This document shows, one piece after another, positions 10,301 through 13,300 of a DNA stretch of 64,000 bases. Below the pieces are notes generated by a model. The model was given only the letters and a program-made list of their open reading frames with translations, was not told where the DNA came from and did not search any database. Where the stretch lies: the NCBI GenBank assembly GCA_048013815.1, contig CM106585.1, forward strand, positions 3,534,001 to 3,598,000, in the 5' to 3' direction. Position numbers and translations under genes: made by a program. Position 1 is the first letter of the stretch. Each line of letters begins with the position of its first letter. Source of the stretch: Setoptus koraiensis. Its lineage: Eukaryota > Animalia > Arthropoda.

Positions 10301-13300
10301 TTAGTGAGCTAACGATAATTAATTAATCAATAAAATTGAATTGACCTCTTGTGTGGCCAAATGCAATCTAATTGCTATTAGTGGCAACATCTAGATGCAC
10401 ACAGTCTAAATTGCAGTCTACTTCACGCGTGAGTGTGTGTGTATGTGTGTAATTCCGTGCCTCTATATTGATTGATCTAAATCTATCGTCTACTCGCTAC
10501 TATATATATAAATACATTTATTTATATATCTACACAATCTCGTCTCATTGCACTCAATGGTATGTTCAGGTGAGCAAGCAGGCAGGCAGTGTGTGGATTT
10601 CGTGTGAAGATAGGGTAAGATTAATCAATGTAATCAACTAATATTTTTTCTAAACTATATAGGCATGTGCATCAGCATTCTACAGGCAATTTACGTGCGA
10701 GGCTAAGCAAGCATCAACTAATTAATGTAATCAATTAATTGAATTAGCGCATAACAGGTGAATAATGCATTCCTTTAGCAATGTGCGTGTATGGTGGCAT
10801 CAATCATCGCAACGATTGGACCCTGTCCAATCGACGATAGGCCAATAATAGGCAAATGGTTTGGGTGCTCGATTGTTACATTTCGATTATGTTTGTTTGT
10901 GCATTAACCAAACCAAATTGTTGTTTTTTACATGTTTTAAATATATTTATGGGTCCATATCACCAATATGTGTTGCTGATTTGTGAAACCTTCGTTATAG
11001 CTTTGTGATGTTTATATTATTTTGTTTAATTGTTATCATCGCATATTGACTGTGTGTGTGTCTGTGTGTGTGTGTGTGTGTGTGTGTTTCCAAATAATTA
11101 ATTAAGAAAGTGCTCATATTCAATTTGGGCTCAACCGAAATTTGTTTGATTTTGTGTCTGTGTCCACTCTATCAGCAACTCTATGATTACCACCATCTCA
11201 TCTCTATATTTATTTAGACATAAATATCTCTAAATCACGTTGTCCATAGCTGCTTCGGTGTCTTGATGCTTTACATTGCTTTGCTCGTTCATTAGATGAC
11301 GATGCGATTATACAATTGACGCTTTATATGTTTTTTTTTCTTTTGTAAGCAAACCGGATTGGGTCAGGTTGGGTCAAGCTAATTTTGTGTGTCTCGCTCT
11401 GCAAAGCTTGTAGCTCAAAAGCTTTATAACTCAACTCTTGTATCTATGTTATGTAATTATCTCATTTATGTAGATTCAAGTTAATTGGTACATGAATCAA
11501 CTCACACACTGCTTATGGTGACTGGCAAACGATGTTCGAGTGATCGTTTTTGTTTGTAGTTGTCGGGATGGGATTGACACTTGCCTGAATAAGAGCATTA
11601 AACCTTGTATAAAGTTTCTGAAGTTATTATGTCGAGTTATTTGTCCATCAGGACTGAATGCGATGTTACCAAAGACCTGTTGTTGTCGTTGTTGTTGTTT
11701 CGTGACAAAAAAAAAACACAGAGACATACAAAACACGTACACACACATTTCTTTTAGTTATCATCTAGTGTAAGCGTCAAGTTATTGATTGGTTGGTTGG
11801 TTGTGTGAATTTAATGGTGCCATTTGTGTTTGGGTGATGACGATAATTAACGAGGCTAACGATGATTGTGATGATGCGTTCATCGATTGATTTCATTGAT
11901 GATGACCGTCCGACCGGAAATGTCGTGTGCTTACTACAACTACAACTACTATTGATTCATACTACTACTACAACTACTATTACTACTACTACTACTACTA
12001 TTATTATTACTACTATTACAACTACAATTACTAGTACAACTACTGCTATTATTATTACTACTACTTTTACGTCATCAACAATCAATTACGTAATTGCAAT
12101 GCATTTGAGAATAGTGCATCAATTGTGTGTGTGTGTGTTTGTGTGTGTGACAGTGAGAATTGTTGTTGATCATTCAGATTTCTACCATAATGAGAAGATT
12201 GGTTCATTCAGGTGACCTCAATATACCTTGTTTTGCTATTCAAACAGCATAGAGAGGTGAGTGTGTTGTTGTTGTGGACAATTTTGTGTCGACAACAACA
12301 ACAAATGGAAGTGTATCTACTACTAGTAACGATTATTATTGTATTGCAGTGACCATTACTACTACAACATTACATAATTATTATTATTATTATTATTATT
12401 GTAATCTACTAGACTGAGGATGCATTAAGATGACGATGATTGTTATTGTCGTTTTTATATTTGGCTGCATTGTAAGACTCACCGAAACAACAATAGTAAC
12501 GAAGACATGAATGTTTGAAAATGATTGTGTCTAGTCAGTGATATATTGGGATCTAACAATATATCACCAAAGACCTGTTGTTGTTTGTTGTGATTCAATT
12601 GATAGCGATCAGCAGTTACGGCGTGTTGAAGCATTAATGAATTGACGATACCGACGACACATAGACGACAAAGCGTAGCAACATCATATAGTAGTAGCGA
12701 TAATGGTAGTAGTAGTTTAGTTATAGATTGGTGTTGAAAGATTTCGAAGAAGCGTTCTCGTATATATTTGCCACTTGGTATAGATTTTCCATCTCTTTCC
12801 ACGCAATCTGTATCTCTTAACGGACAGCTTGCGCATATTGCTGGTTGTATGAGATATCGGTCAGAGGCTCACTCAAAGAGCCTCTCGTTTATGAGGTAGA
12901 GGGATTTTGGCAGGGGATAAAAGGAACGGATATGGTAATTGGTTGGCAATGTATTTTATACTGACCTGCATTCCTATAATGGCGTATATGAAGAATAGCA
13001 TGGCTATCAACAGACAAACATAGGGTAGCGCCTTGAATGATTGTATGAATGTCCACAACAATATTCTAATGGTGTATCCCTGACGAAGTAATTTTATCAA
13101 TCTTGCCGCTCTGAACAATCTCAAGAATCCCACTTGCATGTGATTTTTTTTCTACGTTGTTGCATCGAAAAGTTAAGGAATTAGTTAATTGATTAGTTTC
13201 GTGTCATGTTGAATAATTAATTAATACTAGTGATATTAATAAAGAGCGCCGGTTTTACTTACACCTCCGAACTCCACAATGAAAGCATCTACTGCGCTGC

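What the first reader, a model, noticed from the sequence alone, without database searches (positions are those of the whole stretch)
11585..12574. Duplicated, mutually exclusive exon pair for the domain IV S5-P extracellular loop of Cav2
Seen in sequence: two 92-nt exons, both phase 0 to 2, both starting caacaacag|GTCTTTGGT, lie between exon 12 (...IIGMQ) and exon 14 (CATGEAW). 13a encodes [31 protein letters not shown] and 13b encodes [31 protein letters not shown]. Including both or neither breaks the frame, so exactly one must be used. The 806-nt intron between them is too long for steric exclusion. Knowledge: the mutually exclusive exons I know are IS4a/b and I-IIa/b in Drosophila cac and 37a/b (EF-hand) in vertebrate Cav2; I do not recall one in the IV turret. 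Inference: a lineage-specific switch in the outer pore mouth that could change block, toxin sensitivity or permeation.
Basis: partly seen in the sequence, partly recalled or inferred. Interest (0 to 1): 0.82.

Follow-up and report, generated by a model that had tools for sequence, protein, structure and literature searches.

The report
Old alternative exon pair, calcium channel
This mite's nerve-terminal calcium channel gene carries two interchangeable versions of a small exon that builds part of the outer pore mouth; the pair is real and kept by selection, but flies, wasps, crustaceans, spiders and ticks have it too and public gene models already show it, so it is not a mite novelty.

Summary
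On the minus strand, two 92-nt exons (12574-12483 and 11676-11585) lie between the exon ending IIGMQ and the exon starting CATGEAW. Both align end to end with human Cav2.2 residues 1620-1649. Using both or neither breaks the frame.

Neither copy is dead. In five mite contigs the 13a-type exon has saturated synonymous sites but few amino-acid changes.

No RNA run exists for this mite, so one-at-a-time use here is inferred.

The "lineage-specific" reading fails. The same two-exon layout is found in a tick-like genome, an ant, Daphnia-like DNA and Drosophila subobscura and busckii. In the window, both flies and the tick-like locus the upstream copy ends in a split CG|N arginine codon and the downstream copy in AG|R; the ant's downstream copy is CG|G.

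RefSeq isoform sets of flies, Leptopilina, Daphnia and prawns carry either version, and so do two spider database records. A crinoid does as well.

I found no paper describing the pair. Drosophila melanogaster papers count only two mutually exclusive pairs.

Verdict: a real, ordinary member of an old arthropod pair that is little described in print.

The parts
12966..13139 (-). 3' part of the upstream constitutive exon (IV S4-S5, ends ..IIGMQ, phase 0; donor GTCAGT at 12965-12960). The exon start was not determined.
   Evidence: Pfam Ion_trans E=7e-13; 100% identical peptide in related mite contigs L001-L004 and L083
12575..12965 (-). Intron between the upstream exon and 13a (391 nt), ending in the acceptor caacaacAG
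12483..12574 (-). Exon 13a (a-type, 92 nt, phase 0 to 2; the last two bases CG plus A of exon 14 make Arg). It encodes the end of IV S5, the ECL-IV turret and most of the P1 helix.
   Evidence: purifying selection across five mite contigs
12477..12482 (-). Strong 5' splice site GTGAGT after 13a
   Evidence: gtgagt also follows the a-type exon in L001-L004, L083, L082, L006, L048 and L050
11677..12482 (-). Intron between 13a and 13b (806 nt). It does not align between mite species apart from a trinucleotide microsatellite.
11585..11676 (-). Exon 13b (b-type, 92 nt, phase 0 to 2; the last two bases AG plus A of exon 14 make Arg). It is closest to the usual Cav2 sequence.
   Evidence: 97% peptide identity in L002 and L004; selection test
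11579..11584 (-). GC-type 5' splice site GCAAGT after 13b (CAG|GCAAGT)
   Evidence: the same GCAAGT follows the b-type exon in L005, L017, L034, L046, L048 and L082
10226..11584 (-). Intron between 13b and exon 14 (1359 nt)
10075..10225 (-). Downstream constitutive exon (151 nt): its first base completes the Arg codon, followed by CATGEAW with the domain IV selectivity-filter glutamate, P2 and the start of S6
   Evidence: Pfam Ion_trans
12566..12583 (-). 18-nt block at the 13a acceptor, identical to the block at the 13b acceptor (9 intron bases plus 9 exon bases)
   Evidence: The remaining 83 exon bases are 42/83 (about 51%) identical. The block is absent in related mites, whose 13a starts ATG TTT GG.
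11668..11685 (-). The matching 18-nt block at the 13b acceptor
11932..12016 (-). (UAG/UAC)n-like trinucleotide microsatellite inside the 13a-13b intron
   Evidence: it is the only intronic stretch that matches between the window, L004 and L002

Best explanation
Exons 13a and 13b are the mite's copies of an old arthropod pair of alternative exons in the single Cav2 (cacophony-type) calcium channel gene. Each encodes the same 31 residues of repeat IV: the last turn of S5, the extracellular loop ECL-IV and most of pore helix P1, ending just before the selectivity-filter motif CATGEAW. The spliceosome joins the upstream exon to one of the two and that one to exon 14. Because each copy is 92 nt, an mRNA with both or with neither is out of frame and meets an early stop, so only one-exon mRNAs give a channel. 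This is frame-enforced exclusion, probably cleared by nonsense-mediated decay. The choice is probably tuned by unequal splice sites: GTGAGT after 13a and the weaker GCAAGT after 13b. The two channel versions differ at 15 of 31 positions. 13a carries two acidic turret residues and Gln at P1 position 20. 13b carries one acidic turret residue, at the position of Cav2.2 Asp1629, and Arg at position 20. The outer vestibule should therefore differ by about two charges, which should change ion access, block or peptide-toxin binding. Shown here: the anatomy, the frame logic, selection on both copies, and orthology to pairs with annotated alternative isoforms. Inferred: one-at-a-time use in this mite, the role of splice-site strength, and the functional effect.
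For: Anatomy and frame. Both peptides align end to end with Cav2.2 1620-1649.

Selection: among five mite contigs the a-type exon has pS 0.7-1.0 but pN 0.01-0.16. L001 against L004 shows 15 synonymous and 1 non-synonymous difference. The b-type exon has pN 0.01-0.06. Introns around the exons do not align.

Orthology: the layout with a upstream and b downstream is seen in L002/L004, L082, L050, L034, L006, L017, L048, D. subobscura L088 and D. busckii L089. The split Arg codon is CG|N in a and AG|R in b in all of these except the ant L050, whose b copy is CG|G.

Alternative use in orthologues: RefSeq isoform sets of Drosophila albomicans, hydei, navojoa and virilis, of tephritids, syrphids, Glossina, Stomoxys, Condylostylus and Leptopilina, and of Daphnia and Macrobrachium/Palaemon carry one or the other; so do other database models of Cyphomyrmex and Cherax and two Parasteatoda records.

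Tree: a and b labels cluster, needing 4 changes against a shuffled mean of 11.3, with 0 of 500 shuffles as low.

Toxin contact: ziconotide contacts Asp1628 and Asp1629 on ECL-IV (PMC10761187).
Against: There is no RNA evidence for this mite. The run search returned only DNA holders, and laying them gave no splice joints. The one protein-database hit to 13a is a genomic read-through ORF, not a transcript. The mite a-type exon sits on its own long branch in the 31-column tree, so its orthology to other a-types rests mainly on position, order and the CG/AG split codon. Some a/b labels in that tree were assigned from sequence or from 'alternative isoform' status rather than from genomic order. RefSeq isoforms are models; I did not see their read support. 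No functional data exist for either version in any species that I could find.
Confidence: 0.85

Rival explanations
1. 13a is a dead duplicate (a pseudo-exon) and only 13b is used.
For: 13a is the more divergent copy: 25 bits against Cav2.2 compared with 31 for 13b. It evolves about three times faster at non-synonymous sites between the window and its relatives. There are no transcripts to show its use.
Against: The exact 92-nt length, open frame, AG acceptor and GTGAGT donor are kept in five mite contigs whose synonymous sites are saturated and whose introns do not align. pN is far below pS. Orthologous a-type exons are used in annotated isoforms of many arthropods.
Confidence: 0.03
2. The pair arose by a recent duplication within mites, giving a lineage-specific switch.
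For: The 18-nt identical block at both acceptors looks recent. The mite a-type peptide has its own signature.
Against: The copies are only 55% identical in DNA, with 10 synonymous differences in the 16 shared codons. The same order and split-codon pattern occur in flies and a tick-like locus, and the same order in an ant and Daphnia-like DNA. The 18-nt block is absent in related mites and is better read as a short gene-conversion tract or microsatellite coincidence.
Confidence: 0.03
3. Both exons are spliced, but 13a serves mainly as a regulatory 'poison' partner: including it together with 13b makes a frame-shifted mRNA that lowers channel output, rather than a second channel version.
For: Double inclusion gives an early stop. 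13a has the stronger donor.
Against: A poison exon needs no conserved peptide, yet the 13a peptide is under strong protein-level constraint at the residues conserved in all Cav channels. Orthologous a-only isoforms are annotated as full-length proteins.
Confidence: 0.07
4. The tandem pairs in different phyla are repeated independent duplications at a duplication-prone exon, not one ancient pair.
For: In the unidentified, non-arthropod-like contigs (L037, L047, L061, L065) the two copies fall together in one unresolved group with mollusc sequences rather than splitting into a and b clades. The first copy carries the GC donor in L020, L072 and L076, whereas the second copy carries it in the arthropod-like loci.
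Against: Within arthropods, the order and the a/b sequence signatures agree between chelicerate-like and insect loci, and the CG|N versus AG|R split codon agrees in all of them but the ant.
Confidence: 0.3

Closest known systems
Alternative IV S5-P1 exons of insect, crustacean and spider Cav2 (cacophony, 'type A alpha-1') genes, as annotated in RefSeq and GenBank isoform sets
   Same: Same gene family and same position, between ..IIGMQ and CATGE.W. Same phase and a length of 2 modulo 3. Same order, with a upstream and b downstream. Same split Arg codon pattern, CG|N against AG|R, in the flies and the tick-like locus.
   Different: The mite a-type peptide is unusually divergent (..[10 protein letters not shown].. 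rather than ..RHNNFQSF.GG..). The window's two acceptors share an 18-nt block. In flies the b exon is 95 nt, not 92. I found no paper that describes this pair.
Drosophila cacophony IS4A/IS4B and I-IIA/I-IIB mutually exclusive pairs (PMC11828482, PMC12370356)
   Same: Same gene. Tandem homologous exons are chosen one at a time, tuning the single invertebrate Cav2 gene.
   Different: Those pairs encode a voltage sensor and the I-II linker, not the pore. They are 99 and 117 nt, both divisible by 3, so the reading frame does not enforce their exclusion. Those papers state that cac has only two such pairs.
Lymnaea and protostome Cav3 exons 12a/12b (II S5-P1 turret) (PMC4436565, PMC9694082)
   Same: It works alike: mutually exclusive exons replace an S5-P1 extracellular turret just outside the selectivity filter of a four-repeat calcium channel.
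   Different: It is a different gene (T-type) and a different repeat (II, not IV). There the turrets differ in length and cysteine number and switch Na+/Ca2+ preference. 13a and 13b are equal in length and have no cysteines.
Vertebrate Cav2 exons 37a/37b and the mollusc Cav2 IV S2 pair (PMC5818475)
   Same: Mutually exclusive exon pairs in Cav2 genes.
   Different: They lie at other sites: the C-terminal EF-hand region and IV S2. No vertebrate protein returned by the searches showed an alternative version of this exon.

Membership tests
Cav2-type high-voltage-activated calcium channel alpha-1 gene | Ion_trans repeats followed by the GPHH/EF-hand region and the IQ domain | tested here: met
   Pfam: Ion_trans E=3.6e-92, GPHH 2.7e-29, Ca_chan_IQ 1.3e-28 on exons of the same minus-strand gene
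Cav2-type high-voltage-activated calcium channel alpha-1 gene | Closer to Cav2 than to Cav1 or Cav3 | tested here: met
   The best solved-structure match for both exons is Cav2.2, then Cav2.3, then Cav1. The top full-length hits are named type A alpha-1 or cacophony. A separate Cav1-like locus lies elsewhere in the genome.
Cav2-type high-voltage-activated calcium channel alpha-1 gene | Selectivity-filter glutamate of repeat IV in the motif ..TGE.W | tested here: met
   CATGEAW at the start of exon 14
Mutually exclusive exon pair | Tandem homologous exons of equal length and phase, each with its own splice sites | tested here: met
   92 nt each, phase 0 to 2. Acceptor AG for both; donors GTGAGT and GCAAGT.
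Mutually exclusive exon pair | Using both or neither destroys the reading frame | tested here: met
   A local frame check gives stops in both cases
Mutually exclusive exon pair | Mature mRNAs contain exactly one of the two | not testable with these tools
   No RNA run holds this locus and the runs laid are DNA contigs. Orthologues have annotated isoforms with one or the other.
Mutually exclusive exon pair | Both copies kept by purifying selection on the peptide | tested here: met
   pN 0.01-0.16 (a) and 0.01-0.06 (b) against pS 0.65-1.0 among mite contigs. The two fly a-type exons differ at 10 sites, all synonymous.
Pan-arthropod Cav2 IV S5-P1 a/b pair | a-type upstream and b-type downstream, between the ..IIGMQ exon and the CATGE.W exon | tested here: met
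   Window, L002, L004, L006, L017, L034, L048, L050; L082; L088 and L089; tandem read-through models P0285 and P0413
Pan-arthropod Cav2 IV S5-P1 a/b pair | Split arginine codon CG|N after a and AG|R after b | tested here: met
   Window: CG|A and AG|A. The same pattern holds in flies, the tick-like locus, the Daphnia-like locus and other loci. Exceptions: the ant L050 b copy is CG|G and the L005 a copy is AG|G.
Pan-arthropod Cav2 IV S5-P1 a/b pair | Peptide groups with the a clade or the b clade | tested here: inconclusive
   Mite b groups with chelicerate b-types. Mite a forms its own long branch. The labels cluster overall (4 changes against 11.3 in shuffles), but the tree has only 31 columns and some labels were assigned from sequence.
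Cav3 exon 12a/12b turret switch | Repeat II turret of a T-type channel, with the versions differing in length and cysteine count | tested here: not met
   This is repeat IV of Cav2. The versions are equal in length and have no cysteine. It resembles that switch in how it works only.
Docking-site/selector RNA-pairing type of exclusive splicing | Conserved complementary intronic elements near the alternative exons | tested here: inconclusive
   No conserved intronic block among three mite species other than a trinucleotide microsatellite. I did not fold the introns.

The most novel reading that the evidence does not exclude
The IV S5-P1 a/b pair is a single ancient switch of the Cav2 outer pore. 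It predates the chelicerate-mandibulate split and may be bilaterian, given the crinoid isoforms and the tandem pairs in non-arthropod contigs. It has been overlooked in the calcium-channel literature because the Drosophila melanogaster annotation lists only two exclusive pairs. On this reading the two versions give channels with different permeation or peptide-toxin sensitivity.
Probability: 0.25. Interest if true: 0.6.

Novelty: new member of a known kind. Interest (0 to 1): 0.4.

Why it matters
For this mite, the pair is an ordinary, conserved part of the Cav2 gene. Gene models should carry two isoforms and should not read through both exons, as some public models of other species do.

More broadly, invertebrates have one Cav2 gene where vertebrates have three. 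A third conserved alternative exon pair, the only one inside the pore module, is a cheap way to make two pore mouths from one gene. It swaps residues at the ECL-IV positions that contact a peptide blocker in human Cav2.2.

Cav2 is a target of spider and cone-snail toxins and a candidate acaricide and insecticide target. Isoform-specific sensitivity would therefore matter for pharmacology. The fly literature that I could search does not mention this pair, although the exon is intact and constrained in a Sophophora species.

Tried and rejected
RNA evidence. Laying them showed both exons unchanged in all three and no real splice joints. The two joints listed have 22-nt sides in the CAA microsatellite and are artefacts.

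Database search for 13a. A region-limited word search with the open stretch around 13a found one protein, a genomic ORF that reads through the intron in a related mite. It is not a transcript.

Fetching loci. Look-ups failed for P0014, P0004, P0002, P0290 and P0260, which are not on record. The Littorina gene was too long to return DNA.

Relatives. The genome search has no relatives for a eukaryote.

Conserved intronic pairing elements. None was found.

Dead-duplicate and mite-specific readings. Both were rejected on selection and orthology.

Operator rules. I did not send any joined exon model to a search tool. The only joining was a local frame check inside a script.

Full report
**Observation**

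The gene lies on the minus strand. Reading it gives this layout:
- An upstream exon ends at 12966 with ..IIGMQ, followed by the donor GTCAGT.
- Exon 13a is at 12574-12483.
- Exon 13b is at 11676-11585.
- The next exon starts at 10225. Its first base completes an arginine codon and is followed by CATGEAW.

Both candidate exons are 92 nt. Both are preceded by caacaacag and begin GTCTTTGGT. The introns are 391, 806 and 1359 nt.

A local frame check gives an open frame with either exon alone. It gives a stop inside 13b if both are used and a stop in exon 14 if neither is used.

Both peptides align without gaps over all 30 full codons to human Cav2.2 residues 1620-1649 (E = 7e-7 and 8e-5 against the solved-structure sequences). 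Cav2.3 and Cav1 follow as weaker matches.

Other exons of the same gene carry Ion_trans, GPHH and Ca_chan_IQ domains.

This is a GC-AG intron with the textbook CAG|GCAAGT context. The nearest GT after 13b would give a 96-nt exon that breaks the frame.

**Are both copies alive?**

No RNA run holds this locus. The three holders contain the intron words as well and are DNA. Laying them showed both exons identical in all three samples and no true splice joints. I therefore tested selection instead.

A scan of metagenome contigs with the upstream exon returned 80 loci, and a Logan contig added one more. Five mite contigs have an upstream-exon peptide identical to the window's: L001, L002, L003, L004 and L083. 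L003 and L004 are identical at 13a.
- Each carries a 13a-type exon of exactly 92 nt, with an AG acceptor and a GTGAGT donor.
- L002 and L004 reach further downstream and also carry the 13b-type exon.
- Synonymous sites between these species are saturated in every exon (pS 0.65-1.0).
- Non-synonymous differences are few: pN is 0.01-0.16 for 13a and 0.01-0.06 for 13b. L001 against L004 shows 15 synonymous changes and 1 non-synonymous change in the a-type exon.
- The surrounding introns do not align, apart from a trinucleotide microsatellite.

An untranslated relic would not keep its length, frame, splice sites and peptide under these conditions. 13a is a coding exon, and it evolves about three times faster than 13b.

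**How old is the pair?**

The window's two copies are 55% identical in DNA and 16/31 identical in protein. They show synonymous differences in 10 of the 16 shared codons. The duplication is therefore old.

Two tandem copies with proper splice sites and a length of 2 modulo 3 stand at the same place in many other contigs. Named proteins identify several of them.
- The ant locus L050 matches two Cyphomyrmex costatus models that each use a different copy.
- L034 matches Daphnia.
- L082 comes from an arachnid-like genome whose upstream copy matches Ixodes proteins.

I also fetched the whole cac loci of Drosophila subobscura (L088) and D. busckii (L089). Both hold an a-type exon upstream and the standard exon downstream. 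The 10 nucleotide differences between the two fly a-type exons are all synonymous third positions.

Two small features recur across these loci:
- The arginine codon split by the downstream intron is CG|N after the upstream copy and AG|R after the downstream copy. This holds in the window, both flies, the tick-like locus, the Daphnia-like locus and several unidentified loci. The exceptions are the ant's b copy and L005's a copy.
- The GCAAGT donor after the downstream copy recurs in L005, L017, L034, L046, L048 and L082.

A maximum-likelihood tree of the 31 columns is poorly resolved, but the a and b labels cluster. They need 4 changes, against a shuffled mean of 11.3, and none of 500 shuffles was as low. 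Two caveats apply: the mite a-type sits on its own long branch, and some labels were assigned from sequence or isoform status rather than from genomic order.

I conclude that the pair predates the split of chelicerates and mandibulates.

Beyond arthropods the picture is open. RefSeq isoforms of the crinoid Antedon differ exactly in this segment. Tandem pairs also occur in unidentified non-arthropod-like contigs (L037, L047, L061, L065, L072). Whether these share the arthropod origin is unresolved.

**Is alternative use documented elsewhere?**

Yes, in databases. The following carry one version or the other:
- RefSeq isoform sets of Drosophila albomicans, hydei, navojoa and virilis, of tephritids, syrphids, Glossina, Stomoxys and Condylostylus, of both Leptopilina species, of Daphnia magna and pulex, and of Macrobrachium and Palaemon.
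- Other database models of Cherax.
- Parasteatoda, where RefSeq isoforms carry the a-type and one other database record carries the b-type.

Tick and spider models mostly use the a-type. Three public models read through both copies and look like annotation errors: Polistes P0285, Daphnia magna P0413 and Choristoneura P0416.

**Is it in the literature?**

Within the searchable library I found no description of this pair.
- Two recent Drosophila melanogaster papers state that cac has only two mutually exclusive pairs, IS4 and I-II (PMC11828482, PMC12370356).
- The Aplysia Cav2 paper reports a pair in IV S2 (PMC5818475).
- The nearest functional analogue is the Cav3 12a/12b turret pair in repeat II (PMC4436565, PMC9694082).

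I could not test D. melanogaster itself. The exon is intact and constrained in D. subobscura, a Sophophora species. Its presence in D. melanogaster is therefore likely, but that is an inference.

**Mechanism**

- Exclusion by the reading frame is shown. Clearance of out-of-frame mRNAs by nonsense-mediated decay is established knowledge of that pathway, not something tested here.
- I found no conserved intronic element that would support RNA-pairing selection.
- The unequal donors (strong GT after a, GC after b, conserved in several lineages) suggest that regulated splice-site strength sets the choice. This is an inference.

**What the two versions change**

Using the gap-free alignment to Cav2.2, exon positions 4-13 are ECL-IV and positions 17-30 are P1.

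A structural review reports that ziconotide contacts Asp1628 and Asp1629 on ECL-IV, and that alpha2-delta contacts only ECL I-III (PMC10761187).
- Position 10, which matches Asp1629, is Asn in 13a and Asp in 13b.
- Position 8 is Asp in 13a and Ser in 13b.
- P1 position 20 is Gln in 13a and Arg in 13b.

The two versions therefore differ by about two net charges at an exposed rim of the pore mouth. A difference in ion access, block or peptide-toxin binding is a reasonable but untested prediction.

**Context in the genome**

Cav2 is single-copy in this 48.8-Mb assembly. The Cav1-like paralogue lies in a 2357-residue intronless frame and so has no such pair. Earlier notes of this scan call the organism a mite. 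I did not verify the species.

I searched exon by exon, by reference. 

**Verdict**

The pair is real, functional and very probably mutually exclusive. It is the mite's copy of an old pan-arthropod pair that public annotations already show, so it is neither lineage-specific nor new in kind. The remaining interest is that the pair appears undescribed in print and functionally untested.

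Noticed in passing
window 12566-12583 and 11668-11685 (minus strand): The two acceptors share an 18-nt identical block (9 intron bases plus 9 exon bases), while the rest of the exons are about 51% identical. Related mites lack the block: their a-type exon starts ATG TTT GG. It looks like a short gene-conversion tract from 13b to 13a, or a CAA-microsatellite coincidence.
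   Followed up: partly
window 11932-12016; L004:10604-10640; L002:10671-10726: A (UAG/UAC)n-like trinucleotide microsatellite sits in the intron between the a and b exons in all three mite species. It is the only intronic stretch that matches between them. It could be chance in microsatellite-rich genomes, or a binding platform for a splicing repressor.
   Followed up: no
P0285 (Polistes exclamans), P0413 (Daphnia magna), P0416 (Choristoneura fumiferana): Public gene models that contain both the a-type and the b-type segment in tandem, bridged by translated intron. They are probably annotation errors caused by this exon pair.
   Followed up: partly
L088:35684-35776 and 37236-37331 (D. subobscura); L089:26223-26315 and 27341-27436 (D. 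busckii): Drosophila cac loci hold an intact, constrained a-type exon upstream of the standard exon. D. melanogaster papers count only two mutually exclusive pairs. D. melanogaster itself could not be checked here.
   Followed up: partly
L007, L009, L010, L011, L012, L057: Contigs with the same upstream-exon peptide in which that exon is fused, without an intron, to a single a-like copy. Each contig has a different copy sequence. This may be a lineage that lost the pair, or several species or paralogues. L007 is contiguous through exon 14 and may be a transcript or an intron-poor gene.
   Followed up: no
L020, L021, L072, L076: In these unidentified contigs the GC donor (AG|gcaagagg) follows the first copy, not the second. 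The second copy is 95 or 98 nt. This is the mirror image of the arthropod layout.
   Followed up: no
P0160 and P0166 against P0009 and others (Antedon, crinoid): RefSeq isoforms X2 and X8 of a crinoid Cav2 gene carry a different 31-residue IV S5-P1 segment from the 32-residue one in the other listed isoforms. The same kind of pair therefore exists in a deuterostome.
   Followed up: partly
G000:C1:14655436-14655606 (L085): The Cav1-like paralogue of this mite lies in a 2357-residue open frame with no intron in this region, unlike the exon-rich repeat IV of Cav2.
   Followed up: no
P0295, P0296, P0299, P0301 (Drosophila isoforms): Some annotated fly isoforms differ from the standard b-type segment by a single residue in P1 (..SFEQG.. 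or ..SFIEG.. instead of ..SFIQG..). The cause was not examined.
   Followed up: no
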